From sequence record MW879344.1: a DNA stretch of 64,000 nt. One strand, written 5' to 3'. The notes under the pieces were generated by a model. That model was not told the origin of the DNA, did not search any database, and was given only the letters and a program-made list of their open reading frames with translations. The position numbers and the translations under genes are program-made. Of the stretch, positions 29,331-60,514 are shown in pieces; position 1 is the stretch's first letter, and every line of letters starts with the position of its first letter.

Positions 29331-29449
29331 CGGGAATTGGTGTAATGGCAGCACAACGTTATAACATAAATTCTTGTACAGGAATTTCACAGCAACCAAT
29401 ACAATTGCATAGGGAGCCGTGAGATAAGGTTCGATTCCTTGATTCCCGA
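29331..29449 (+). ncRNA. tRNA-like RNA with ACAGCAA-helix insert in anticodon arm (TTGCATA loop)
   Basis: CGGGAAT/ATTCCCG acceptor, D and T arms, AAATTC/GAATTT helix, ACAGCAA at 29389. Confidence 0.75.
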
Positions 29450-42409: not shown

Positions 42410-42485
42410 GCCTTTGTAGCTCAGTTGGTAGAGCGGGAATCTCTAAAATTCTTTGTCGTCGGTTCGAGTCCGACCATCGGCACCA
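42410..42485 (+). tRNA. amber suppressor tRNA (anticodon CUA)
   Basis: GGAAT-CT-CTA-AA-ATTCT anticodon arm, canonical D/T arms, ACCA end; two mismatches in acceptor stem. Confidence 0.85.
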
Positions 42486-47126: not shown

Positions 47127-47422
47127 AAAAGTTTCATCATGAACATCAAATTCATTTAGTATCACCTTGCATTGAACTTATTACCAATAATTCAGATTAT
47201 TGGGAAGTACGTGAACGCTTGGATGATAATATGAATGGTGAAGTATCATTGGTATGGGATCAGTATAATAGAAATCTTTTAAATCTCAGTATTAAAGTAC
47301 GTTCAGCCGATATTAATTATGCTGAAAAGCTTGATAAAGCTATTGACGATTTAGCTGGGTACTGTTATGATTACGAATGTAATATCCGTATCGGCGGTGA
47401 AATTGTTCGGAGTGAAGTATGA
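47123..47422 (+). CDS. hypothetical protein
   Basis: coupled ORF. Confidence 0.6.
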   Translation: MKKFHHEHQIHLVSPCIELITNNSDYWEVRERLDDNMNGEVSLVWDQYNRNLLNLSIKVRSADINYAEKLDKAIDDLAGYCYDYECNIRIGGEIVRSEV

Positions 47423-47662: not shown

Positions 47663-47778
47663 GCAGTGATCGTCTAGAGGCTTAGGACACGAAAAAGCGA
47701 TTCTTGGTTAAGAATCTTACGGCATCAATAAACTTTCATTTCACGAACGTAACGCAGGTTCGAATCCTGCTCACTGCA
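47663..47778 (+). tRNA. tRNA-Glu(UUC)-like gene interrupted by 43-nt helix/ACGGCA insert (47692-47734)
   Basis: Glu-type D arm GTCTAGAGGCTTAGGAC; CG|TTC-ATTTCAC-GAACG stem restored on removing the insert. Confidence 0.8.
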
Positions 47779-47796
47779 CTAATATTGGAGTAATAT

Positions 47797-48099
47797 ATGA
47801 AAAGTATTCTTCTCTTTGAGTACTTCGCAACTGGCGAAGGTTGGCGTACTGTAATCCGTTTCTATAATCAGAATCGTATTTCTGATGAGGCTGCACTGGA
47901 AACATTAAAATCAGAATTCGATCCATATTTTCATGTAGGATTTGAATTGCATGATATTAGTACTGTCAAGGATAACGCATCATTAATGCGTACTTTGAAA
48001 GAACATGTTCCAATTTTGTACAATTATGTTATGTTACCAGATGATGAATATCATCCAGTAATTAATGTAAAATATGAAGGTTATGTAAACTATTCATAA
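47797..48099 (+). CDS. hypothetical protein
   Basis: GGAG RBS. Confidence 0.6.
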   Translation: MKSILLFEYFATGEGWRTVIRFYNQNRISDEAALETLKSEFDPYFHVGFELHDISTVKDNASLMRTLKEHVPILYNYVMLPDDEYHPVINVKYEGYVNYS

Positions 48100-48108
48100 A
48101 AGTAATTT

Positions 48109-48234
48109 GTGGGGTTAGCTCAGTCTGGTAGAGCAGCGAAAGAAAAAACAATGGAATCTTGAAAAGGATTCTAACAGCATTATATCTTCTACTGTAAATT
48201 CGCAGGTCGGTGAGTTCGAATCCACCATCCCACA
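48109..48234 (+). tRNA. tRNA-Tyr(GUA)-like gene interrupted by 51-nt helix/ACAGCA insert (48141-48191)
   Basis: GCGAA|CT-GTA-AA-TTCGC; short variable loop; bulged T stem. Confidence 0.7.
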
Positions 48235-48307
48235 CAAATTTGTCTTGACATGGTGTATCCTGTGTGTTATATTACTATCATCAATTAAACGAGATAGGAT
48301 TTAAATT

Positions 48308-48580
48308 ATGGACGGGATTGCAATGCGTATTCAAGTCTTACCGAATGGTTTGATTATTGGTCATGTTGTTCCAAAAGAACATCCAGCGAATCGCTGTTAT
48401 AATTTGGAACCTAACCATGTATATGAACTTCAAATTGATCTTACTTATGGTAACGATAAATTGAAAAACATTGGCGAAGCTGATTTTAAAACTTCTGATG
48501 TTGATCCTCGTGGTTGTAGTATCGACCACTTGATTGCAGTAAGCAGTGGGCGTCATTTAACCGTGAATGATGGGAAATAA
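48308..48580 (+). CDS. hypothetical protein
   Basis: sigma70 promoter at about 48246. Confidence 0.55.
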   Translation: MDGIAMRIQVLPNGLIIGHVVPKEHPANRCYNLEPNHVYELQIDLTYGNDKLKNIGEADFKTSDVDPRGCSIDHLIAVSSGRHLTVNDGK

Positions 48581-48582
48581 AA

Positions 48583-48948
48583 ATGAAAGTATTCATTGAT
48601 GATATTCGTGACCCAAAAAATTACTTGACACCAGAACAGGCTGATGGTATTATTTGGATCAAAGAGTGGTGGTCAGCAAAACGCTTTTTGATTGATCATG
48701 CTGCTGAAATTGAAGTGATTCATTTTGACCATTACATGGATGAACCAACGTTAACTGGTAAAGATTTATTCTTTATGGTTGCTGGGGATTGTATGTGGGG
48801 TGGAAAAGAAACATGGATTAAACTACAGAAAATTTATTTACATTCTTCTGATGTTGATATGGTTGAAGAACTTGTTGAAGAATATAGTACTGAATTGGCT
48901 GAAGCTGGTGTTGAGCTTATTGATAACCATCAAGAAAGGAACTACTAA
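48583..48948 (+). CDS. cyclic-phosphate-processing receiver-like domain protein, copy 1
   Basis: VFIDDIRDP...IHFDHY...TGKD...IYLHSS. Confidence 0.65.
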   Translation: MKVFIDDIRDPKNYLTPEQADGIIWIKEWWSAKRFLIDHAAEIEVIHFDHYMDEPTLTGKDLFFMVAGDCMWGGKETWIKLQKIYLHSSDVDMVEELVEEYSTELAEAGVELIDNHQERNY

Positions 48949-49305
48949 ATGAAAGTTTATGTAGATGATATTCGTAATCCACAAAACCATCTAAGTTCTG
49001 AACAGGCAGCCGATGTAGTATGGATTAAAGAATGGTGGGATGCACGTAACTTTATCTTTTATAATAATTTAGAAATTGAAGTGATTCATTTAGATAATTA
49101 TCTAGGTGACCGTACCCACACTGGGGCTGATTTACTTCAAATGATTACATATAGGTTTCGCCGTGGGGAATTCCCTAAGTTGAAACAAATTTATCTTCAC
49201 AGTTCTGATAAAGATATTGTGAATAAACTGTATGACAAACATATTGAACGTTGTACAGAAGCTGGTGTTGAATTAATTAAAAATTCACGTCCAAACCGTA
49301 GTTAA
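48949..49305 (+). CDS. cyclic-phosphate-processing receiver-like domain protein, copy 2
   Basis: VYVDDIRNP...IHLDNYLG..TGAD...IYLHSS; tandem paralog. Confidence 0.65.
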   Translation: MKVYVDDIRNPQNHLSSEQAADVVWIKEWWDARNFIFYNNLEIEVIHLDNYLGDRTHTGADLLQMITYRFRRGEFPKLKQIYLHSSDKDIVNKLYDKHIERCTEAGVELIKNSRPNRS

Positions 49306-49311
49306 ACAAAT

Positions 49312-49433
49312 GGCGAGTTAGCTCAGTTGGTAGAGCAGGAAAAAAACCGATTCTTGTATTGAATCGTACAGCAAACAATACTATTGCACTTTTAATGCCC
49401 TTGTCGGGGGTTCAATTCCCTCACTCGCCACCA
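49312..49433 (+). tRNA. tRNA-Lys(UUU) gene interrupted by 46-nt helix/ACAGCAA insert (49340-49385)
   Basis: removing the insert gives GG|GCA-CTTTTAA-TGCCC, a perfect 76-nt cloverleaf with ACCA. Confidence 0.85.
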
Positions 49434-49493: not shown

Positions 49494-50105
49494 ATGAATA
49501 TATGTTTACAATGTAATCAAGAAATTGATGATAAGAAAAAGTTTTGTAATAAATCTTGTGCGGCAAAGTACAATAATTCTCATAGAATATTGTCGGAAGA
49601 AACAAAATCTAAAATTTCTAAATCTTTAAAAGATCGAGAAGCTAAATTTATTGAAACTGAAAATGTTAAGGCTGGTAGACTTCGAGCAGGTGCAAAACGT
49701 AGTGAATATGCGATTGGAAAATTATTATCTGATGATTTTGAATCATTAAGTGTTATAAGAAAGAAAAAACGTGTAAAAATGGAACAAGATAATAAATGTT
49801 TAATATGTGATTTATCTGAATGGCGTGGTTCTTTATTAACATTGGAAGTAGATCATATAGATGGAAATAACATGAATAATAGTAGAGATAATTTAAGAGC
49901 TTTATGTCCTAATTGTCATTCACAAACTGAAACGTGGCGTGGGAAAAATAGTAAAAAAGTTATTTCAGATGAACTTTTAATTGAGATTATTTCAGTTTCT
50001 TCATCTATTGCAGAAGTTATTCGAAATACCAATATGTCTAAATCAAAAACTTCGTATAATAAAATCCGTGCTATTATGGAAATGAATAAACTATCATTTA
50101 ACTAA
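49494..50105 (+). CDS. HNH homing endonuclease
   Basis: CLQC..FCNKSC finger; LEVDHIDGNNMNN..DNLRALCPNCH. Confidence 0.9.
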   Translation: MNICLQCNQEIDDKKKFCNKSCAAKYNNSHRILSEETKSKISKSLKDREAKFIETENVKAGRLRAGAKRSEYAIGKLLSDDFESLSVIRKKKRVKMEQDNKCLICDLSEWRGSLLTLEVDHIDGNNMNNSRDNLRALCPNCHSQTETWRGKNSKKVISDELLIEIISVSSSIAEVIRNTNMSKSKTSYNKIRAIMEMNKLSFN

Positions 50106-54444: not shown

Positions 54445-54556
54445 AGGATTCGCACAGCAACAATAAAATCTTAAAATTCAATTGGTGAAAACAACCTTGC
54501 AGTTCGATTCTGCTTCCACAATGCGTGGATCTGGTCGATAGAAAAAACCGAATCCT
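54445..54556 (+). ncRNA. circularly permuted tRNA-like RNA 3
   Basis: AGGATTCG-C-ACAGCAA, GCAG-TTCGATT-CTGC, TCCAC/GTGGA, CGAATCCT. Confidence 0.72.
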
Positions 54557-54594
54557 GATTTTAATTAAGAAGTACTAAAGAATTTGATACACAC

Positions 54595-54747
54595 GGATTT
54601 ATACAGCAAACATAATCCTAAAATAAAACATACGATAATGTTACTAACTCGGAATTCGTTCCCTTCGTTAGTACTTGGCAACTTGGGTACTTAAATAAGT
54701 TGTATCACCTCACGTGTATCGGATTAGAGGTGATTATAAATAAATCC
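54595..54747 (+). ncRNA. derived member of the ACAGCAA family (permuted type) 4
   Basis: GGATTTA-T-ACAGCAA ... TAAATCC; AACAT/ATGTT, ACTAAC/GTTAGT, ATCACCTC/GAGGTGAT helices. Confidence 0.6.
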
Positions 54748-54783
54748 AGTAACACAAAAGTACCTTGAACGGTACTTTTTTAT

Positions 54784-54876
54784 GGTAGGTTGGCAGAGTT
54801 TGGCTTATTGCACTTGTCTTGAAAACAAGCGGGGGTTAACAGCCCTCCGAGGGTTCAAATCCCTCACCTACCTCCA
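54784..54876 (+). tRNA. tRNA-Ser(UGA)
   Basis: class II cloverleaf, CT-TGA-AA, CCA. Confidence 0.95.
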
Positions 54877-54887
54877 ATACAATAAAG

Positions 54888-55205
54888 GTGAACATGATGG
54901 ATTCAGTTGGTTTAATCGTTGTGTTTTTAGAACAACGTGTTCGTGGTTCTAATGAAATGCATTATGTAGTACAAGTTACTGAAGAAGGAACTTGTGACGT
55001 TCATGTTACTGACTCATGGAGTTTTAAGTCATGGGAAGATTTAAAAGAAACGCATCCTACTTTCAAAAGTTTGTTATATGAATTTTTTAATTCTTGCAAT
55101 TGGGCACCTTATGTAAACGAAAAAGAAATTTGGGCTGATGAAGTAATCGGCGGCGAAGGTCTTTATGATGATGATGATTCACATGTATTAAGTACTGATT
55201 TGTAA
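54888..55205 (+). CDS. hypothetical protein
   Basis: ORF track. Confidence 0.55.
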   Translation: MNMMDSVGLIVVFLEQRVRGSNEMHYVVQVTEEGTCDVHVTDSWSFKSWEDLKETHPTFKSLLYEFFNSCNWAPYVNEKEIWADEVIGGEGLYDDDDSHVLSTDL

Positions 55206-55213
55206 AGTTCAAT

Positions 55214-55288
55214 GGGGTACGTAGCTCAGTCTGGTAGAGCAGCCATGCGAAAACGGTGTGTCGGTGGTTCGAATCCACTCGCTCCCCA
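55214..55288 (+). tRNA. degenerate tRNA (Phe GAA-like, probable pseudo-tRNA)
   Basis: good D and T arms, mismatched acceptor and anticodon stems. Confidence 0.5.
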
Positions 55289-55292
55289 CTAA

Positions 55293-55349
55293 GGAATCTA
55301 GCAGCAACCATAACCCAATCAAACTTTTAATTTGACAATTATGGATTCC
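55293..55349 (+). ncRNA. mini ACAGCAA-family RNA carrying only a Lys(UUU) anticodon stem-loop
   Basis: GGAATCT-A-GCAGCAA ... TCAAA-CTTTTAA-TTTGA ... GGATTCC. Confidence 0.8.
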
Positions 55350-55527
55350 CGTTATTTTTAAGGATGTGATATGTCTAAAGAACAAGATGAATTTGAAAAA
55401 GAATATCTTATAAGTAAGCGTATTGATCCAAAAGCAACATTTTATATAAAATCTCGTAGAAAGAAAAATGGTTATAGAACTCGTGAATTGAATAATAAAT
55501 TTCAAGAATTTCTTAAACGATTTAAAG

Positions 55528-55619
55528 GGTAAAGTGGCAGAGCGGCTGAATGCAACCGCTTGGAAAGCGGTCAGGTTAGGTAATCCCTAGCCTCGTAGGT
55601 TCAAATCCTATCTTTACCG
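55528..55619 (+). tRNA. tRNA-Ser(GGA)
   Basis: class II cloverleaf, TT-GGA-AA. Confidence 0.93.
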
Positions 55620-55671
55620 CAAAGTAATAACTCCTTATTAAAGTGAAGTACAAAAACAATAGGAGAATATT

Positions 55672-56028
55672 ATGTACGAGAAAGATGATGGTCCATTAAC
55701 TGATGAACAAATTCGTATCATCCGTGAAATGAATAGCCATCTGAATCAAACTGATTTAGAAATTGATTTAAATTGGTTGAACAGTGATATACAAGGAAAT
55801 GCAATGTATTACGACTATTATTACAAAGTTGACGGTGATCTTCGTCGTTATACCAGTAATCAAGAGTTAACGGATGCGGAAATCAATAATATTTTTGGTG
55901 CAAGCAAACAAGTAGTAATGCTTACTCCAATTGTATTTGAACGTGACGTAACTACTGAAGACAAATCTGGTAAAAAGATTAAAAGTACTGAAAAAGTACA
56001 TGTTGGCTTCTTAGGATATGTGGAATAA
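55672..56028 (+). CDS. hypothetical protein
   Basis: AGGAG RBS. Confidence 0.55.
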   Translation: MYEKDDGPLTDEQIRIIREMNSHLNQTDLEIDLNWLNSDIQGNAMYYDYYYKVDGDLRRYTSNQELTDAEINNIFGASKQVVMLTPIVFERDVTTEDKSGKKIKSTEKVHVGFLGYVE

Positions 56029-56030
56029 AA

Positions 56031-56717
56031 ATGTCAAAAAAGACTGATAAAGAAGTAAAAGATACAAAAGAAAAGTACACTGTTGTTAAACACGGTTCAC
56101 TAACACTAGTGAATACACCAACAGTAAAAACTTTCTATATGAATGGTTCTATTGATCATCCTACATTAACTAAGTTCCAAAAGTTCTTAGAAGATACATG
56201 TACGGAAAATAATAAAATTGATACCGAAGAAACTGAACGCAAAGAAAAGGATGAATTTAAAAAGATTCATGATCCTGAATCTAAGCCAGAGTTTGTTCCT
56301 GCTAAACGTAAAGTTGAGCGTATCAATCTGGTTATCAATAGTGGTGGTGGTTTAGTTGCAGTAATGCTAGAAGTTGTAGCACTAATGAAAACTTCACCAA
56401 TTCCAATTGATACCTACTGTTTTGGTTCTGCAATGAGTGCAGCTTTCTTTATCTTCTTACATGGCAAACGCCGTTTTGTTGGTGAAGGTGCCTCATTTAT
56501 GACACATAGCATTGGTGCTATGGCATGGGATAATGTACCAAACATGACAATTCGTATGGAGTACTTGGTTAAACAAAACGAGTACGCACAACAGGAAATT
56601 GCTAAACGTACTGGAATTCCTCTTGAAAAATTAAAAGAGAAAGAACATCTCGATTGGTACTTGACTGCTGAAGAAGCGTTAGATGTTAAAATCGGTGAAT
56701 ATTTGATCCGAGATTAA
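56031..56717 (+). CDS. clpP: ClpP-like protease
   Basis: INSGGG, GSAMSAA (catalytic Ser), FMTHS, DWYLTAEEAL. Confidence 0.8.
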   Translation: MSKKTDKEVKDTKEKYTVVKHGSLTLVNTPTVKTFYMNGSIDHPTLTKFQKFLEDTCTENNKIDTEETERKEKDEFKKIHDPESKPEFVPAKRKVERINLVINSGGGLVAVMLEVVALMKTSPIPIDTYCFGSAMSAAFFIFLHGKRRFVGEGASFMTHSIGAMAWDNVPNMTIRMEYLVKQNEYAQQEIAKRTGIPLEKLKEKEHLDWYLTAEEALDVKIGEYLIRD

Positions 56718-56757
56718 ATATAAATTCTGGATTCGAAAGAATCCTTTTTTAAGTGAG

Positions 56758-56988
56758 ATGATTATGGACAATCAACACAAACATATTAAAGGGTATCGTG
56801 ACCTTTCACAAAAAGAAGTGGATGCGATGAATGAGATTAAACAACTGGCTGCCATCGTTGGAGAGTTGATAGAAAAACTTGAAAGTACTGAATCAGTAGA
56901 TAAACGTTGGCTTGCAATTGCAAAGACGGATTTACAAAAAGGATTCATGTCAGCAGTACGAAGTGTGGCTAAACCAGATTCCTTCTAA
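56758..56988 (+). CDS. acb2: Acb2-family cyclic-nucleotide sponge (anti-CBASS)
   Basis: MDNQHKHIKGYRDLSQKEVDAMNEIK...RWLAIAKTDLQKGFMSAVRSVAKPDSF matches the Acb2 pattern. Confidence 0.85.
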   Translation: MIMDNQHKHIKGYRDLSQKEVDAMNEIKQLAAIVGELIEKLESTESVDKRWLAIAKTDLQKGFMSAVRSVAKPDSF

Positions 56989-56997
56989 GGAACAAAG

Positions 56998-57378
56998 ATG
57001 TATACAACGGTTAATCATGCTGATATAATTGATGATATTATAACTGAAATACTTGAAATTTATACATGTCGAGTTGAAATTTATAAAGATGGTCATTTAT
57101 TCACTCAGTACGGGTATAATACTAAACATAATGTGAATTATCATATAAATGTAAAGTACTATAATGATAATCCAAGTAATGGTGATAAAGCGAATAGCTT
57201 AATGGTAGAATTTAAATTTACCAATAGAGTTCCGAAGGGACTGAAAAATCATTACAAGTTATCTATACCTGAAATAACAAGTCTTACAGAAGAACGGCAT
57301 TTTCAATTAATGTTTGTCACTGATGATATGTATTTGGATTATGAAGTTATAAATAAATTACGTACACATATTGTGTAA
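56998..57378 (+). CDS. TEExxFQ-motif family protein
   Basis: LTEERHFQLM. Confidence 0.6.
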   Translation: MYTTVNHADIIDDIITEILEIYTCRVEIYKDGHLFTQYGYNTKHNVNYHINVKYYNDNPSNGDKANSLMVEFKFTNRVPKGLKNHYKLSIPEITSLTEERHFQLMFVTDDMYLDYEVINKLRTHIV

Positions 57379-57389
57379 AAAAAAAGTTT

Positions 57390-57443
57390 TAGAATCTAAC
57401 AGCAATCAAAACTCATTGGATATATGAAAAAAGATAGATTCTA
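57390..57443 (+). ncRNA. mini ACAGCAA-family RNA (TCAT-TGGATAT-ATGA hairpin)
   Basis: TAGAATCT-A-ACAGCAA ... AGATTCTA; abuts tRNA-Ile. Confidence 0.75.
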
Positions 57444-57449
57444 GTATTT

Positions 57450-57522
57450 GGGAATATAATTCAGTTGGTAGAATGCTCGACCGATAATCGAGTCGCCGCT
57501 GGTTCGAGTCCAGCTATTCCCA
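57450..57522 (+). tRNA. tRNA-Ile(GAU), C at position 33
   Basis: cloverleaf, CTCGA-CC-GAT-AA-TCGAG. Confidence 0.85.
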
Positions 57523-57621
57523 CGAAGTAGTTCAGTACTGAAAAATGTACAGTGAAATTATTCAACACTATAGGTAGCACTTTGAATGAATCAGTAAGCC
57601 TATAAGTAACTACAATAAATT

Positions 57622-57750
57622 TGGAATTCAACAGCAATTCACTTACTAAAAACAGCTACCTCACGGTTTGTAGGTTCAAGTCCTACCTTGTACTTTCGAG
57701 TACATGTGGTGAAAATGGTAAACACGGCTGTCCAAAAGAAATGAATTCCA
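57622..57750 (+). ncRNA. circularly permuted tRNA-like RNA 5 (Leu-type D arm, long variable arm)
   Basis: TGGAATTCA-ACAGCAA, ACAGC/GCTGT, GTAGG-TTCAAGT-CCTAC, TGTACT-TTCG-AGTACA, TGAATTCCA. Confidence 0.8.
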
Positions 57751-57802
57751 GTATTAATTAAGACATAAATATTCTTATACACTTTTTTGTAAGGATATAA
57801 TT

Positions 57803-58402
57803 ATGGAAATGAAAAAGTTGATGGAAGATATTTCTGCCATCATGGAAGGACAATTACCTGGTTATTATTATCATGGAAGTTCTGCCCCAATATCAAATTT
57901 TAGTGATGAGTTTGTTGGTAGAGGAAATGATGAATACGGTCCGGGAATATATTTTAGTTCAGTTCCAAATACTTCTATAGGTTATGCAAAAGATGGCGGT
58001 TCTAATGGAATGGTATATCAGTGCGAAATCAATTTAAGAAAAGAACTATCTAAAAAAACTAGAGTTAATAAAGCAGTACTATTAAAATTAATGCAAAATA
58101 CACCTGATGAAGATGCATATACTAACTGGAATGAAAATAAAAATGTTGCTTATAGAACAGCATTACAGGGTTATGTAGATGAAGGTAATATGTATGATGC
58201 GTTAATGGGTGTTTGGTACGATTGGTATAGAGAATATCCTGTTCAATTCGTGCGTTCACTAGTACAGTTAGGATATGATGGATACATATATACTTTTGCA
58301 AGCGGTGAACGTTTTATTATAGTATATAATCCAGCAAGTATAAAAGTTGTAAACACATTCAATCCAGAAGAAGCTATGCAGAAACTGATTGGAAGTGAAT
58401 AA
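57803..58402 (+). CDS. ADP-ribosyltransferase-like (ART-fold) protein, probably late-expressed
   Basis: YYHGS...F...YGPGIYFS..YA...VY pattern; CATAAATA late word upstream. Confidence 0.55.
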   Translation: MEMKKLMEDISAIMEGQLPGYYYHGSSAPISNFSDEFVGRGNDEYGPGIYFSSVPNTSIGYAKDGGSNGMVYQCEINLRKELSKKTRVNKAVLLKLMQNTPDEDAYTNWNENKNVAYRTALQGYVDEGNMYDALMGVWYDWYREYPVQFVRSLVQLGYDGYIYTFASGERFIIVYNPASIKVVNTFNPEEAMQKLIGSE

Positions 58403-58409
58403 TAAGATT

Positions 58410-58529
58410 TGGAATTCAACAGCAAATCATTCTAAACCCGTAGCATGTCGTAGGTTCAAGTCCTACCAGTACTTTCGAGTACTGTAGCTCAGTTGGTAGA
58501 GCAGCCACCTTAAAAAGAAATGAATTCCA
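58410..58529 (+). ncRNA. circularly permuted tRNA-like RNA 6 (canonical class I D arm)
   Basis: T-arm, then CAGTACT-TTCG-AGTACTG acceptor, then TA-GCTC-AGTTGGTA-GAGC D-arm, inside TGGAATTCA/TGAATTCCA. Confidence 0.85.
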
Positions 58530-58560
58530 GTATTAATTAAAACAACATGAGTATAAATCA

Positions 58561-59010
58561 ATGTCTGATAAGCATCAATTTAAAGTAAACATCGGTGATT
58601 GGTCACAAGATGGTCATAATCAATATGATGTTTTAGTTCTTAACAGTACTAAACCAGTAGATGAAGTACAAAAAGCATTTAAAAAAGCTGCAACTGATTT
58701 ACATTTACTAGTAAATGGTCGTTTTCTAATTGCAGATGAATTTGAAGATTGTAGTCTATCTGAAGACCATGCAGAAGTTCTTAAAAATGCAGGTGTAAAA
58801 TTTGATGATTTAGTGTATAATGATGGCGATGATGAAGAACCAAATTATATTATTGAAGGTTCAAGTGATATGACTATCCTTGTGATGCGGATCGCCCAAC
58901 TTGAATTGGACTTTGAATTTGAAATTACGAATGATGCAATTCCGAACTTTAACGGGTTCTGGACAGAAGAACAAATGCCATCAATCGGATATGGTTTGTA
59001 TAACATATAA
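58561..59010 (+). CDS. conserved phage hypothetical protein
   Basis: IGDWSQDGH motif. Confidence 0.65.
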   Translation: MSDKHQFKVNIGDWSQDGHNQYDVLVLNSTKPVDEVQKAFKKAATDLHLLVNGRFLIADEFEDCSLSEDHAEVLKNAGVKFDDLVYNDGDDEEPNYIIEGSSDMTILVMRIAQLELDFEFEITNDAIPNFNGFWTEEQMPSIGYGLYNI

Positions 59011-59019
59011 AACAAGTTT

Positions 59020-59084
59020 TGGAATCTAGCAGCACCCATAAAATGAAATCAACTGTTAATTGAAAAATTCAAAAATGGATTCCA
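59020..59084 (+). ncRNA. mini ACAGCAA-family RNA carrying only an Asn(GUU) anticodon stem-loop
   Basis: TGGAATCT-A-GCAGCAC ... TCAA-CTGTTAA-TTGA ... GGATTCCA. Confidence 0.78.
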
Positions 59085-59103
59085 GCCTATTTCGGAGTAA
59101 AAA

Positions 59104-59373
59104 ATGTATTATGCTCGATTAGAATATCCAAACAATGGATATGAGATTGAAAGAATACGTCTTAAAGCCTTAGATCGCAAAAAGTACTACCCAGTAGTTT
59201 CGATTGATATTGGTAGTTCAAGTACTCGCATATATCTTGAAGGTGATAAGAATGCATATAATAGTGTGAACTTTGAATTCTATACCAAACATGGTGATGA
59301 ATATATTCTTGAAGATATTTTCGAAGACCCTGATTTAAATCCGTACTTGGATGATGATGATGAAGAATATTAA
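59104..59373 (+). CDS. hypothetical protein
   Basis: GGAG RBS. Confidence 0.6.
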   Translation: MYYARLEYPNNGYEIERIRLKALDRKKYYPVVSIDIGSSSTRIYLEGDKNAYNSVNFEFYTKHGDEYILEDIFEDPDLNPYLDDDDEEY

Positions 59374-59393
59374 ATAAAAATACCACAAATAAA

Positions 59394-59422
59394 TGAAACG
59401 CTTCAAAAAATTGTGGTATAAT
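59394..59422 (+). promoter_or_regulatory. TGAAAC-N17-TATAAT promoter
   Basis: exact motif; TACCACAA/TTGTGGTA inverted repeat overlaps. Confidence 0.7.
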
Positions 59423-59441
59423 ATAAGTAAGTTAAACAAGA

Positions 59442-59513
59442 GGTTATGTCGTATAAAGGTTATTACGGAGAGCTGTTAACTCTTTTATCTTGGTTCGATT
59501 CCAAGCATGACCG
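59442..59513 (+). tRNA. tRNA-Asn(GUU)
   Basis: cloverleaf, CT-GTT-AA. Confidence 0.9.
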
Positions 59514-59630
59514 CAAAAAGTTAAATTCACCAGGCGTACTATGGTGGGAAAGGTATCATGATACCAATTCGAATAGAATACGTATTAAACCCTTGAACGG
59601 TTTTCTGTAAACTCAATTTAACAAATAATT

Positions 59631-59685
59631 AAGAATCTAACAGCAATCAAAACTCATTCGATTATATGAAAAAAGATAGATTCTT
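59631..59685 (+). ncRNA. mini ACAGCAA-family RNA (TCAT-TCGATTAT-ATGA)
   Basis: near-duplicate of 57390-57443; abuts tRNA-Gln. Confidence 0.75.
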
Positions 59686-59690
59686 GTTTT

Positions 59691-59763
59691 AGGAGTATGG
59701 TGTAATTGGTTAGCACACGTGACTTTGACTCACGTAGTTGAGGTTCGAGTCCTTATATTCCTG
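59691..59763 (+). tRNA. tRNA-Gln(UUG)
   Basis: cloverleaf, CT-TTG-AC. Confidence 0.9.
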
Positions 59764-59914
59764 CAAATTAAAATTTCATTCATTTCCTTGTGTGAAACAA
59801 GCTGGTATGATTCCCCTTGCTTGTAAAATTATCGAACGGGAACCGCGTTGCACCTGTACAGGTCAGATTGTAAAGATCGAGTATGTACAGTACTGAGAGC
59901 GGCAGTACAATAAA

Positions 59915-59996
59915 GCGGGATTAGCTCAGTGGTAGAGCACTTGCCTTCCAAGCAAGAGGCGAATAGGTTCCATCGGTTCGAATCCGATATTCCGCT
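59915..59996 (+). tRNA. tRNA-Gly(UCC) with 15-nt variable region
   Basis: CTTGC-CT-TCC-AA-GCAAG, U73. Confidence 0.85.
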
Positions 59997-60114
59997 CAAA
60001 CTAAACAAACAATAAGGTGATTTTTATGCTATAGAATCCTAGTACTGGTCCTCCTAAAGAATTTAATTCTGATATAAACAACTCAAAATTAAACTACTAT
60101 AGGAAGAACATACC

Positions 60115-60441
60115 ATGTTAAACAAAGAACAATATATTACTGTAAAAAATACTTGGAAAGCTGTAAAAGAACATAACATTTTTGATCATGTGATCTATAA
60201 TGTACTTCGTGGAGTCCCATCTGATACTGGTTTCGCACCAATTACAGACAGGGGTCGTTTACACGCTAACAACAATGACCCGTTCAATATGTACAATTAC
60301 GCAGTTCGTGAAATTCATTATGAATTAAACGAAAAACGGTACAATTACGAAAAGACAGTAAAGCATTATTCTGAACTATTCGGCATTGAATTTACAAAAG
60401 AACTCATCGAAGAAATTGTTTCTTTGATTAAAGTTAAATAA
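60115..60441 (+). CDS. hypothetical protein
   Basis: ORF track. Confidence 0.65.
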   Translation: MLNKEQYITVKNTWKAVKEHNIFDHVIYNVLRGVPSDTGFAPITDRGRLHANNNDPFNMYNYAVREIHYELNEKRYNYEKTVKHYSELFGIEFTKELIEEIVSLIKVK

Positions 60442-60449
60442 CAGAATTA

Positions 60450-60506
60450 AAGAATCCAGCAGCAACTAAAACTCATTCGCTTAATATGAAAAAGAAACGG
60501 ATTCTT
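60450..60506 (+). ncRNA. mini ACAGCAA-family RNA (TCAT-TCGCTTAAT-ATGA)
   Basis: AAGAATCC-A-GCAGCAA ... GGATTCTT. Confidence 0.72.
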
Positions 60507-60514
60507 GTTTTTAT

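What the first reader, a model, noticed from the sequence alone, without database searches (positions are those of the whole stretch)
47663..49433. tRNA-Lys, -Glu and -Tyr genes split in the anticodon arm by 43-51 nt inserts that are neither group I nor BHB introns
Seen in sequence: deleting 49340-49385 gives a flawless tRNA-Lys(UUU) with GG|GCA-CTTTTAA-TGCCC and an ACCA end. Deleting 47692-47734 gives CG|TTC-ATTTCAC-GAACG (Glu UUC), at the same 28/29 junction. Deleting 48141-48191 gives GCGAA|CTGTAAA-TTCGC (Tyr GUA, 31/32 junction). Each insert is an A-rich linker, a hairpin, the ACAGCA box and a second linker. A fourth, degenerate case is at 29331-29449. Established knowledge: Lys, Glu and Tyr tRNAs are targets of host anticodon nucleases (PrrC and PARIS AriB cut tRNA-Lys; the PtuAB retron effector acts on tRNA-Tyr; RloC acts on Glu/Lys/Gln-type wobble tRNAs). 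Inference: the insert is either excised by a protein-dependent cut-and-ligate route, or kept to make a protein-tethered tRNA chimaera or decoy. No other Lys or Tyr tRNA gene is present in this window.
Basis: partly seen in the sequence, partly recalled or inferred. Interest (0 to 1): 0.86.

Follow-up and report, generated by a model that had tools for sequence, protein, structure and literature searches.

The report
Ro-like RNA handle inside phage tRNAs
Four tRNA genes of this jumbo Erwinia phage are interrupted by a short conserved RNA element that, across many unrelated phages, travels with a Ro60-like RNA-binding protein. The interrupted genes therefore look more like tRNA-shaped "Y RNAs" than like ordinary intron-containing tRNAs, although splicing is not excluded.

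Summary
Removing 47692-47734, 48141-48191, 49340-49385 and 29359-29406 restores canonical Glu(UUC), Tyr(GUA), Lys(UUU) and Pro(AGG) cloverleaves.

The inserts share a 29-nt module: a hairpin with a conserved upper stem (UCWU/RWGA) and GNNN loop, followed by (A)C(A/G)GCAA. It is not a group I intron, not a BHB intron, and matches no Rfam family.

The module is not confined to these four genes. Nine more copies lie at 54.4-60.5 kb in "opened" form, where the stem is made by the two ends of the unit. They carry bare Lys and Asn anticodon stem-loops or tRNA-like bodies with closed acceptor stems. One matches the tRNA-like half of Rfam YrlA.

The same module occurs in Vibrio, FelixO1-like, Listeria and gut phages. 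There it sits just upstream of, and on the same strand as, a DUF2828/vWA gene whose predicted fold is Ro60. This phage has that gene next to an RNA ligase.

Uninterrupted Lys, Tyr, Glu and Pro tRNA genes exist elsewhere in the genome.

Best reading: the insert is the docking handle of a phage Ro-like protein, making tRNA/Y-RNA chimaeras. Protein-dependent splicing remains a live rival. I found no published description.

The parts
29331..29448 (+). tRNA-Pro(AGG)-like gene with a 48-nt insert at 29359-29406 (junction 29/30). Module (hairpin AAATTCTT-GTAC-AGGAATTT plus CACAGCAAC) at 29369-29397.
   Evidence: Parser gives 5/5 stem pairs, ACGGC-ATAGGGA-GCCGT. CM hit 32.4 bits. Ortholog in CBB (L128 8550-8670). 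The loop CATAGGGAG is shared with nt-1 and D479 genes.
47663..47778 (+). tRNA-Glu(UUC) gene with a 43-nt insert at 47692-47734 (junction 28/29). Module at 47699-47727 (GATTCTT-GGTT-AAGAATC, box ACGGCAT).
   Evidence: ARAGORN after deletion. Parser. CM 29.6 bits. Orthologs with the insert in Yen9-04 and CBB.
48109..48234 (+). tRNA with a Tyr anticodon (GUA) on a short-variable-loop body, with a 51-nt insert at 48141-48191 (junction 31/32). Module at 48154-48182.
   Evidence: ARAGORN after deletion, and with -i. CM 31.8 bits. Ortholog in Yen9-04. Absent from CBB.
49312..49433 (+). tRNA-Lys(UUU) gene with a 46-nt insert at 49340-49385 (junction 28/29) and an encoded ACCA end. Module at 49349-49376.
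   Evidence: ARAGORN after deletion. Rfam tRNA 46.5 bits spanning the insert. CM 25.1 bits. CBB ortholog keeps the split stem through compensatory changes: CG|AGC...GCTCG.
54445..54557 (+). Opened module unit: [AGGATTCG]-CA-CAGCAA-88 nt tRNA-like payload (T arm; acceptor-like hairpin closed by a 5-nt loop)-[CGAATCCT]G.
   Evidence: CBB ortholog has compensatory arm changes, AAGAATC/GATTCTT.
54595..54749 (+). Opened module unit with a 130-nt payload: [GGATTTAT]-A-CAGCAA-...-[ATAAATCC]AG.
   Evidence: 8-bp perfect complementary arms. Payload not analysed.
55293..55351 (+). Opened module unit whose payload is a bare Lys anticodon stem-loop (TCAAA-CTTTTAA-TTTGA, 55319-55335).
57390..57445 (+). Opened module unit with a small hairpin payload, directly upstream of tRNA-Ile. 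Paralogs at 59631 and 60450.
57622..57751 (+). Opened module unit with a tRNA-like payload: T arm, acceptor-like stem closed by a UUCG loop, D arm.
58410..58531 (+). Opened module unit with a tRNA-like payload in YrlA topology: T arm, then closed acceptor (AGTACT-TTCG-AGTACT), then D arm.
   Evidence: Rfam YrlA model positions 24-84, 40.5 bits (gathering score 69) at 58443-58505. Arms TGGAATTC/GAATTCCA.
59019..59086 (+). Opened module unit whose payload is a bare Asn anticodon stem-loop (TCAA-CTGTTAA-TTGA, 59049-59063).
59631..59686 (+). Opened module unit with a small hairpin payload, 4 nt upstream of tRNA-Gln.
   Evidence: CBB ortholog TAGAATC/GATTCTA shows a compensatory change.
60450..60507 (+). 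Opened module unit with a small hairpin payload.
48583..49305 (+). Two tandem cREC_REC ORFs (48583-48948, 48949-49305) between the interrupted Tyr and Lys genes. Possibly associated RNA-end processing; the link is circumstantial.
   Evidence: Pfam PF20274, E 5.9e-8 and 4.7e-11. Conserved at the same place in Yen9-04 and CBB. Not found in the other module-bearing loci.

Best explanation
The 43-51 nt inserts are copies of a conserved RNA module. It has three parts: a hairpin whose upper four pairs are 5'-UCWU/RWGA-3', a GNNN loop, and the single-stranded box (A)C(A/G)GCAA two to four bases downstream. This module is the signature element of a family of phage Y-RNA-like RNAs partnered with a Ro60-fold protein (Pfam DUF2828 + DUF7788/vWA).

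Most likely sequence of events:
1. The four genes are transcribed within the tRNA cluster.
2. Their acceptor ends are matured like those of any tRNA.
3. The module stays in place and is bound by the phage's Ro-like protein (pEaSNUABM49_00180, encoded next to an RNA ligase).
4. The product is a ribonucleoprotein that displays a tRNA body and anticodon arm. It is the circular permutation of a bacterial YrlA-type Y RNA.

Together with the nine stand-alone units in the window, these RNAs would act as tRNA mimics. They could serve as baits or decoys for host enzymes that read anticodon arms (anticodon nucleases above all), or as platforms that bring the ligase to damaged tRNA. Translation would rely on the phage's separate uninterrupted tRNA genes.

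Shown: the module, its covariation, its two topologies, its genomic linkage to the Ro-fold gene, and the redundancy with normal tRNAs.

Inferred: protein binding, retention of the insert, and the decoy or repair role.
For: 1. Same module, two topologies.
- Four closed copies lie inside tRNAs. Nine opened copies have the form [RWGANNN]-NN-CAGCAA-payload-[NNNUCWUG].
- All are on the + strand of the tRNA region. 9 of 68 boxes have an 8-nt perfect partner downstream, against 0 of 63 on the - strand and 0.67 in shuffles.

2. Payloads that can never be tRNAs.
- Some are bare Lys(UUU) and Asn(GUU) anticodon stem-loops with canonical CU-NNN-AA loops.
- Others are tRNA-like bodies whose acceptor stem is closed by UUCG-type loops.
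- One aligns to the tRNA-like half of Rfam YrlA at 40.5 bits.

3. Linkage to the protein in 118 IMG/VR loci (fetched only for ACAGCAA plus a T arm).
- 31 of 63 motif-positive loci carry a DUF2828 gene, against 6 of 55 motif-negative ones. Odds ratio 7.9, p = 8e-6.
- 73 of 76 motif copies are on the gene's strand. They often end less than 110 nt upstream of it.

4. The same arrangement occurs in FelixO1-like, KVP40 and Listeria phages. In KVP40 the stem encloses the Shine-Dalgarno sequence and start codon of the DUF2828 gene, as an autoregulatory operator would.

5. The AF2 model of the DUF2828 protein has pLDDT 89.5. Its 11 best PDB matches are all Ro60/Rsr/phage Ro60, E 3e-8 to 7e-6, aligned over nearly their full length.

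6. This phage encodes the protein beside an RNA ligase. Its CBB ortholog, CBB_183, is a virion component by mass spectrometry.

7. The interrupted genes are redundant. Normal Glu(ttc) and Pro(tgg) genes are in the window. Lys(ttt), Lys(ctt) and Tyr(gta) genes lie just downstream.

8. Several interrupted tRNAs pair a Ser or Tyr anticodon with a short-variable-loop body. Orthologs in Yersinia phage swap the anticodon on an unchanged body (UUC to UCA, UUU to GAU). Both are odd for decoders.
Against: - In about 30 diverse cases, in-silico removal restores exactly a 5-bp stem and 7-nt loop with U33 and a purine at 37. This holds wherever the insert sits (28/29, 29/30, 31/32, 37/38), which is what a spliced intron predicts.
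- Inserts in the loop, such as the Tyr gene here, would spoil display of an anticodon loop if they were kept.
- The four genes keep an open 7-bp acceptor stem and discriminator base. The Lys gene also encodes CCA.
- Two cyclic-phosphate-processing (cREC) genes lie between the Tyr and Lys genes, and the Ro-like gene neighbours an RNA ligase. Both fit cut-and-join chemistry.
- In this phage the Ro-like gene is about 146-194 kb from the module copies, and no copy lies beside it.
- Nothing here shows binding.
- The IMG/VR sample was ascertained with the box sequence itself.
Confidence: 0.5

Rival explanations
1. The inserts are true introns of a new, protein-dependent kind. The module recruits the Ro-like protein as a platform. 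An unidentified endonuclease cuts at the three-way junction. The ends are healed (cREC, kinase) and sealed by the phage RNA ligase, giving functional Lys, Glu, Tyr and Pro tRNAs. Acceptor-closed permuted genes would mature through a circular intermediate, as in the red alga Cyanidioschyzon.
For: - Exact reconstitution of canonical anticodon arms at varied insertion points.
- Compensatory changes keep the split stem in the Lys gene: GG|GCA..TGCCC in this phage against CG|AGC..GCTCG in CBB.
- A perfect circularly permuted tRNA-Arg(UCU) is joined at 28/29 in L025.
- An RNA ligase lies next to the Ro-like gene, an RtcB gene lies near it in a Listeria phage, and cREC genes lie between the interrupted genes.
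- Lak megaphage authors also read long phage tRNAs as intron-containing (10.1101/356790).
Against: - Bare anticodon stem-loop units and UUCG-closed acceptor stems cannot yield tRNAs.
- No endonuclease candidate was found, and no conserved residues mark the junctions. The distances from module to junction vary from 3 to 28 nt.
- The genes are redundant with normal tRNAs.
- Anticodon and body class do not match in several members.
- No insert-less allele or spliced junction was found in IMG/VR or JGI contigs. This is a weak test, because these phages are rare there.
Confidence: 0.3
2. The module is a processing signal or small self-cleaving RNA that defines RNA ends in the polycistronic tRNA transcripts. 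Its natural circular permutations would resemble those of hammerhead or twister ribozymes.
For: - About 15 positions are strongly conserved.
- It occurs in two circular permutations.
- It lies between tRNAs in arrays, with 8-13 nt spacers between successive units.
Against: - No Rfam ribozyme family matches.
- A cut inside a tRNA's anticodon stem has no evident use.
- This reading does not explain the tight linkage to the Ro-fold gene or the operator-like copy over its start codon.
Confidence: 0.07
3. The four genes are decaying tRNA pseudogenes hit by a small mobile DNA insertion, with no function.
For: Databases label them tRNA-Pseudo, tRNA-OTHER or tRNA-Undet.
Against: - Insert and exons are conserved across two phage genera, with compensatory changes in both the hairpin and the split stem.
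- The hairpin covaries across phages of Proteobacteria, Firmicutes and gut hosts.
- No insert-less alleles were found.
Confidence: 0.03

Closest known systems
Bacterial and phage Y RNAs of the YrlA type with Ro60/Rsr (Chen et al. 2014, PMC4201824; phage phiLo Ro60 with Yrl1/Yrl2, PMC12135203)
   Same: - A Ro60-fold partner protein.
- Small RNAs encoded beside it on the same strand in many phages.
- A stem made by the RNA's two ends plus a tRNA-like domain: T arm, closed acceptor, D arm.
- Genomic company of RNA ligases.
   Different: - The protein-side element is a different motif: UCWU(G)/RWGA stem plus CAGCAA, against the published GNCGAAN0-1G. The RNAs stay below the Rfam YrlA threshold.
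- The payloads include bare anticodon stem-loops.
- In the four genes of the finding, the handle is a closed hairpin inserted into the anticodon arm of an otherwise complete tRNA with open acceptor ends.
- In this phage the protein gene is far from the RNAs.
'Enigmatic' introns in tRNAs of Lak megaphages and other huge phages (Devoto et al., 10.1101/356790)
   Same: Over-long phage tRNA genes that give normal tRNAs when an internal piece is removed. The introns are conserved and the mechanism is unknown.
   Different: No link to a Ro-like protein was reported there.
Archaeal non-canonical tRNA introns and split or permuted tRNA genes (BHB-dependent), and permuted tRNA genes of Cyanidioschyzon merolae
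   Same: Interruptions at non-canonical positions, including the anticodon stem. Circularly permuted gene order with the join in the anticodon arm (L025).
   Different: There is no bulge-helix-bulge. Bacterial hosts have no known splicing endonuclease (my own knowledge). The acceptor stems are closed by stable tetraloops rather than processable linkers.
Bacterial group I introns in tRNA anticodon loops
   Same: They interrupt tRNA genes in bacteria and phages.
   Different: Those introns are 200 nt or more with a catalytic core and sit in the loop. Here the inserts are 43-51 nt, mostly in the stem, with no Rfam intron hit.

Membership tests
Group I intron | Catalytic core (P3-P9) of roughly 200 nt or more, detectable with the Rfam Intron_gpI model | tested here: not met
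   The inserts are 43-51 nt. There is no intron hit at gathering threshold or at E<=10.
Group I intron | Insertion in the anticodon loop, with U before the 5' splice site and G as the last intron base | tested here: not met
   Three of four junctions are in the stem (28/29, 29/30). The 5' exons end in G and the inserts end in T or A.
BHB (archaeal/eukaryal) tRNA intron | Two 3-nt bulges separated by a 4-bp helix at the exon-intron junctions | tested here: not met
   MFE folds place both junctions in unpaired A/U-rich linkers at a three-way junction. Only the module hairpin forms in the insert.
BHB (archaeal/eukaryal) tRNA intron | Splicing endonuclease (EndA/Sen) available in the cell | not tested
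   I did not search the whole phage genome. Its absence from enterobacteria rests on my own knowledge.
Ro60/Y RNA ribonucleoprotein | Partner protein with the Ro60 fold (helical-repeat ring plus vWA domain) | tested here: met
   AF2 model of the DUF2828 protein has pLDDT 89.5 and pTM 0.89. The top 11 PDB matches are Ro60, Rsr and phage Ro60. A homolog in this phage lies at record 101383-102909. No sequence-level PDB hit.
Ro60/Y RNA ribonucleoprotein | RNA encoded close to the Ro gene on the same strand | tested here: inconclusive
   Met in gut-phage loci (31 of 63 against 6 of 55; 73 of 76 same strand) and in FelixO1-like, KVP40 and Listeria phages. Not met in this phage or GAP32, where no module lies beside the gene.
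Ro60/Y RNA ribonucleoprotein | Physical binding of the RNA to the protein | not testable with these tools
   Only indirect evidence: the KVP40 copy encloses the SD and AUG of the protein's own gene.
YrlA (Rfam RF02553) | tRNA-like domain in the order T arm, closed acceptor, D arm | tested here: met
   Window 58443-58505 aligns to model positions 24-84. The four interrupted tRNAs are the circular permutation of this, with an open acceptor and a closed handle.
YrlA (Rfam RF02553) | Rsr-binding motif GNCGAAN0-1G in the terminal stem, and score at or above the gathering threshold of 69 bits | tested here: not met
   Score is 40.5 bits, with no alignment to model positions 1-23 or 85-114. The motif here is UCWU(G)/RWGA plus CAGCAA, against PMC4201824.
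Circularly permuted tRNA genes (C. merolae type) | 3' half upstream of 5' half, with the join in the anticodon arm restoring a canonical tRNA | tested here: met
   L025: CT|..|CGC-CTTCTAA-GCGAG, a perfect Arg(UCU). Window units 57622 and 58410 are looser.
Circularly permuted tRNA genes (C. merolae type) | Maturation to an aminoacylatable tRNA through a circular intermediate | not testable with these tools
   The acceptor stems are closed by UUCG- or GNRA-like loops, which argues against it.
Known self-cleaving ribozymes | Match to an Rfam ribozyme model | tested here: not met

The most novel reading that the evidence does not exclude
Phages of bacteria possess a third, protein-dependent way of splicing tRNA. 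A 29-nt handle recruits a Ro60-like protein and an RNA ligase, which excise inserts from anticodon stems and join split or permuted tRNA genes. Interrupted 'reserve' tRNAs would be invisible to host anticodon nucleases until they are spliced.
Probability: 0.27. Interest if true: 0.95.

Novelty: new variant of a known kind. Interest (0 to 1): 0.8.

Why it matters
Ro60 and its Y RNAs are conserved from bacteria to humans, yet their function is poorly understood. About 700 sequenced phages carry a Ro-fold DUF2828 gene for which, as far as I could find, no RNA partner motif has been described.

A recognisable 29-nt handle would make those partners predictable from sequence. The handle is attached to whole tRNAs, tRNA mimics and bare anticodon stem-loops of defined specificity (Lys, Asn, Glu, Tyr and others). 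That points directly at the contest between phages and tRNA-cleaving host defences.

It would also explain a class of 'pseudo' or 'undetermined' tRNA annotations in jumbo, T4-like, FelixO1-like and gut phages. It suggests how tRNA-like Y RNAs could arise: a handle inserted into a tRNA, followed by permutation.

If the inserts turn out to be spliced, this would be a new tRNA splicing pathway in the bacterial world.

Tried and rejected
- **Group I, BHB and known ribozymes.** Rejected on size, Rfam scans and folds.
- **A closing helix (P1) between the two linkers.** Linker lengths do not correlate overall (r = -0.03). They correlate only modestly after dropping loop-located inserts (r = 0.51, p = 0.008). 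ViennaRNA pairs no linkers in the four window genes. Not claimed.
- **Pairing of the box with the 3' junction (GCAA/TTGC).** Seen in some members, not general.
- **DNA-level reading as a promoter.** I considered TTG of the hairpin as a -35 element with TAnnnT in the 3' linker, and the reverse strand TGCTGTA as resembling a MotA box. Dropped because the stem covaries and because the module occurs in Listeria and gut phages.
- **IS200/IS605-like or integron-like hairpin elements.** Considered and dropped: there is one hairpin only, at fixed positions in orthologs.
- **Insert-less alleles or spliced junctions.** None in IMG/VR or JGI contigs. Only the four known isolates carry the Glu gene.
- **A second conserved protein partner downstream of DUF2828 in gut-phage loci.** None found. 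cREC homologs occur only in the Rak2-like phages.
- **A module copy beside the Ro-like gene in GAP32 and in this phage.** None.
- **Literature.** Searches on phage tRNA introns, DUF2828 and phage Ro/Y RNA found no description of this motif. The library lacks most subscription journals.
- **Structure job.** It was repeated without that row.
Full report
**Where we are.** The window is 100% identical to Erwinia phage pEa_SNUABM_49 (MW879344.1, Eneladusvirus, a 358-kb Rak2-like jumbo phage). Window position 47400 is record position 295400. It covers most of the phage's tRNA region. ARAGORN finds 20 ordinary tRNA genes, none of them Lys or Tyr, and none at the four sites of the finding. GenBank labels two of the four as tRNA-Phe(aaa) and tRNA-Lys(ttt) and leaves the Tyr gene unannotated. 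Relatives call them tRNA-Pseudo, tRNA-Undet or tRNA-OTHER.

**The observation.**
- An independent parser fixes the acceptor, D and T arms and then asks which split of the remaining 17 nt gives a paired stem. It returns 28/29 for Glu and Lys, with 5/5 pairs, U33 and a purine at 37.
- For the fourth gene it returns 29/30 with ACGGC-ATAGGGA-GCCGT, that is Pro(AGG). An equally paired Val(AAC) reading exists at 40/41.
- I prefer Pro because the loop CATAGGGAG recurs in insert-bearing genes of Vibrio phages nt-1 and D479, one of which has a typical tRNA-Pro body.
- The fourth case is therefore not degenerate. It is conserved in Pectobacterium phage CBB.
- The inserts share an A-rich linker, a hairpin, the box and a second linker.

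**Relatives keep the inserts.**
- Yersinia phage fHe-Yen9-04 has the Glu, Tyr and Lys genes, and CBB has the Pro, Glu and Lys genes, all with inserts at the same junctions.
- The split stem is maintained by compensatory change: Lys is GG|GCA...TGCCC here and CG|AGC...GCTCG in CBB.
- In the Yersinia phage the same bodies carry different anticodon loops: ATTCAAC (UCA) instead of Glu UUC, and ATGATAA (GAU) instead of Lys UUU.
- BLAST at low stringency then found the insert in T4-like Vibrio phages (nt-1, D479, CZ01, QD01, VS1), Xanthomonas phage XbC2, Erwinia phage Kaldavass and a human-gut phage contig.

**The module.**
- Aligning 18 inserts from these sources gives three variable, covarying base pairs, then four conserved pairs (5'-UCWU with 5'-RWGA), a loop that starts with G, two to four bases, and then (A)C(A/G)GCAA.
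- The helix is 98.4% paired. Four of seven pairs change on both sides, no shuffle of 500 does as well, and every slid register collapses to 35-50%. I picked these sequences with a hairpin finder, so the pairing percentage is partly built in. The two-sided changes at a fixed distance from an invariant box are not.
- A covariance model (R1) finds only the four genes in the window (25-32 bits; next best 13.9).
- It finds about 65 further sites in 124 other loci, often 110-130 nt apart in arrays.
- About 30 of those are clean interrupted tRNAs. Most are at 28/29 or 29/30, and some lie in the loop.
- Junction residues are not conserved, and the distance from module to junction varies from 3 to 28 nt.

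**What it is not.** Rfam (4227 families) gives nothing but tRNA over these genes, at gathering threshold or at E<=10. The same holds in gut-phage loci. The inserts are a quarter of the size of the smallest group I introns. Folding shows only the module hairpin. The junctions sit in unpaired linkers at a three-way junction, not in a bulge-helix-bulge.

**The turn: the module also exists opened.** Some R1 hits were not in tRNAs.
- Inspection showed units of the form [RWGANNN]-NN-CAGCAA-payload-[NNNUCWUG], in which the two arms are complementary. The same stem is made by the two ends of the unit, and the box now lies inside.
- A strict scan finds 116 opened and 20 closed copies in 1.0 Mb of IMG/VR loci, against 16 in shuffled sequence.
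- The payloads are telling:
  - many are perfect anticodon stem-loops and nothing else (for example TAAGA-CTTTTAA-TCTTA), with Lys UUU the most frequent;
  - some are whole tRNAs whose acceptor stem is closed by a 4-6 nt loop, such as a flawless Arg(UCU) joined at 28/29 in L025;
  - some are tRNA-like bodies in which the module takes the place of the acceptor stem.
- The window itself has nine opened units at 54445-60507, all on the + strand among the tRNA genes:
  - two carry bare Lys(UUU) and Asn(GUU) stem-loops;
  - three carry tRNA-like bodies with closed acceptors;
  - three carry a small hairpin;
  - one carries an unexamined 130-nt payload.
- Nine of 68 boxes on the + strand have an 8-nt perfect partner downstream. 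None of 63 on the - strand do. Shuffles average 0.67.
- CBB has orthologous units with compensatory arm changes.
- The unit at 58410-58531 aligns to the tRNA-like half of Rfam YrlA (T arm, closed acceptor, D arm) at 40.5 bits, below the family threshold of 69 because the Rsr-binding half does not match.

**The protein partner.**
- In gut-phage loci the arrays end just before a 470-530-aa gene with Pfam DUF2828, DUF7788 and a weak vWA match. GenBank often names it 'Ro-like RNA-binding protein'.
- Of 63 IMG/VR loci with a strict motif copy, 31 contain this gene. Of 55 without, 6 do (odds ratio 7.9, p = 8e-6). The loci were ascertained by the box plus a T arm, not by the protein.
- 73 of 76 motif copies in those loci are on the gene's strand (p = 2e-18). 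The nearest often ends within 110 nt of the start.
- In FelixO1-like phage skuden the gene heads the tRNA cluster, with at least four opened units among the first tRNAs.
- In a Listeria phage three units lie directly upstream of the gene, and an RtcB ligase lies 1.3 kb downstream.
- In KVP40 the unit [GACAT]-TTT-ACAGCAA-...GAGGA...-[ATGTC]AG wraps the Shine-Dalgarno sequence and start codon of the gene, as a translational operator would.
- An AlphaFold model built on 22 homologs (pLDDT 89.5, pTM 0.89) has Ro60 proteins as its eleven best PDB matches: Xenopus and human Ro60, Deinococcus Rsr and Thermus phage Ro60. They align over nearly their full length, E 3e-8 to 7e-6, TM about 0.5. Sequence searches of the PDB find nothing.
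- About 700 phage records carry a homolog, including every phage in which I saw the module.
- This phage's copy is at record 101383-102909, preceded by an RNA ligase (PF21189 + PF09414), as in GAP32 and CBB.
- The CBB protein, CBB_183, was found in purified virions with 8 peptides (PMC5259590).
- No module copy lies beside the gene in the Rak2-like phages.

**Redundancy.** The 46 kb after the window hold uninterrupted His, Phe, Lys(ttt), Tyr(gta), Cys, Lys(ctt), Met x2 and Ala genes. With the window's set, the ordinary genes cover every amino acid except Val. The interrupted Glu, Tyr, Lys and Pro genes are therefore extra copies.

**Weighing the two readings.**
- For retention as a Ro-like RNP (my best explanation, 0.5):
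  - the module marks RNAs that can never be tRNAs;
  - the opened tRNA-like units have designed-looking UUCG or GNRA closures;
  - the architecture is that of YrlA;
  - the linkage to a Ro-fold protein is strong and phylogenetically broad;
  - the four genes are redundant;
  - several family members combine a Ser or Tyr anticodon with a class I body, or swap anticodons on an unchanged body.
- For splicing (0.3):
  - canonical arms are restored exactly wherever the insert sits, including in the loop, where a retained insert would wreck the loop;
  - the acceptor ends are open, and one gene has an encoded CCA;
  - cREC genes (PF20274, predicted cyclic-phosphate processing) lie between the Tyr and Lys genes, and a ligase lies beside the Ro-like gene.
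- The two are not exclusive. The Ro-like protein could be the platform of a cut-and-join machine. I could not find an endonuclease, and searches for spliced or insert-less sequences came back empty.
- A role as decoy, bait or repair platform against anticodon nucleases is inference. It rests on the anticodon-specific payloads and on published work that phage tRNAs answer tRNA-targeting defences (PMC10264068; PMC13096335, abstract seen).

**Known or new.**
- Lak megaphage authors reported 'enigmatic' tRNA introns without a mechanism (10.1101/356790).
- Bacterial and phage Y RNAs with tRNA-like domains are known, but their Ro-binding motif is GNCGAAN0-1G (PMC4201824).
- I found no paper and no Rfam family describing this module or its link to DUF2828. 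The library does not hold most subscription journals.
- I therefore file it as a new variant of a known kind: a Ro/Y-RNA system with a new RNA handle and a new architecture, the handle being inserted into the anticodon arm of complete tRNAs.

Noticed in passing
window 49494-50105: An HNH/NUMOD3 homing-endonuclease gene sits just after the interrupted tRNA-Lys. It is present in pEa_SNUABM_49 and _50 but not in BF or the other Erwinia isolates, whose match stops at the end of the tRNA. The adjacent tRNA-Lys is only 80% identical to theirs while the flanks are 98% identical. This looks like co-conversion during homing.
   Followed up: partly
window 59915-59997; L127 2477-2563 (record 314477-314563): tRNA-Gly(UCC) of 83 nt and tRNA-Lys(UUU) of 87 nt each carry a long, class-II-like variable arm. 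This is unusual for these isoacceptors.
   Followed up: partly
window 55215-55287: A tRNA-like gene is seen by Rfam (36.4 bits) but not by ARAGORN, and its anticodon arm is degenerate. It is followed within 6 nt by the opened unit that carries a perfect Lys anticodon stem-loop.
   Followed up: partly
window 42410-42485: An amber-suppressor tRNA (anticodon CUA, called tRNA-Pyl by ARAGORN). It is also annotated in CBB.
   Followed up: no
L002 1516-1629 and 3349-3469: In Yersinia phage fHe-Yen9-04 the orthologs of the interrupted Glu and Lys genes have anticodon loops ATTCAAC (UCA, opal-reading) and ATGATAA (GAU) on otherwise conserved bodies. Vibrio phage nt-1 also has an interrupted UCA gene.
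   Followed up: partly
L130 3905-3975 (KVP40 record about 169700-169760): An opened module copy whose stem includes the AUG, and whose payload includes the Shine-Dalgarno sequence, of the phage's own DUF2828 gene. This suggests translational autoregulation.
   Followed up: partly
L136 1938-3452 (CBB_183): The Ro-fold DUF2828 protein of phage CBB was detected in purified virions by mass spectrometry (8 unique peptides). It may therefore be delivered with the DNA.
   Followed up: partly
L025 reverse strand 1616-1733: A flawless circularly permuted tRNA-Arg(UCU). The order is 3' half, 6-nt acceptor-closing loop, 5' half, flanked by the two arms of the module and joined at 28/29.
   Followed up: partly
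L128 22374-22483 (CBB gt009): A 110-nt 'tRNA-Val GAC' with a long insertion in the variable region that lacks this module. There is no ortholog in the window.
   Followed up: no
window 48205-48222 and L002 2435-2452: The interrupted Tyr-anticodon tRNA has a one-base bulge in the 5' strand of its T stem (GGTG-A-G / CCACC). It is conserved as a bulged T in the Yersinia phage.
   Followed up: no
L131 6843-8054: The Listeria phage carries an RtcB-type ligase 1.3 kb downstream of its DUF2828 gene and tRNA cluster. This parallels the Rnl-type ligase beside the gene in Rak2-like phages.
   Followed up: no
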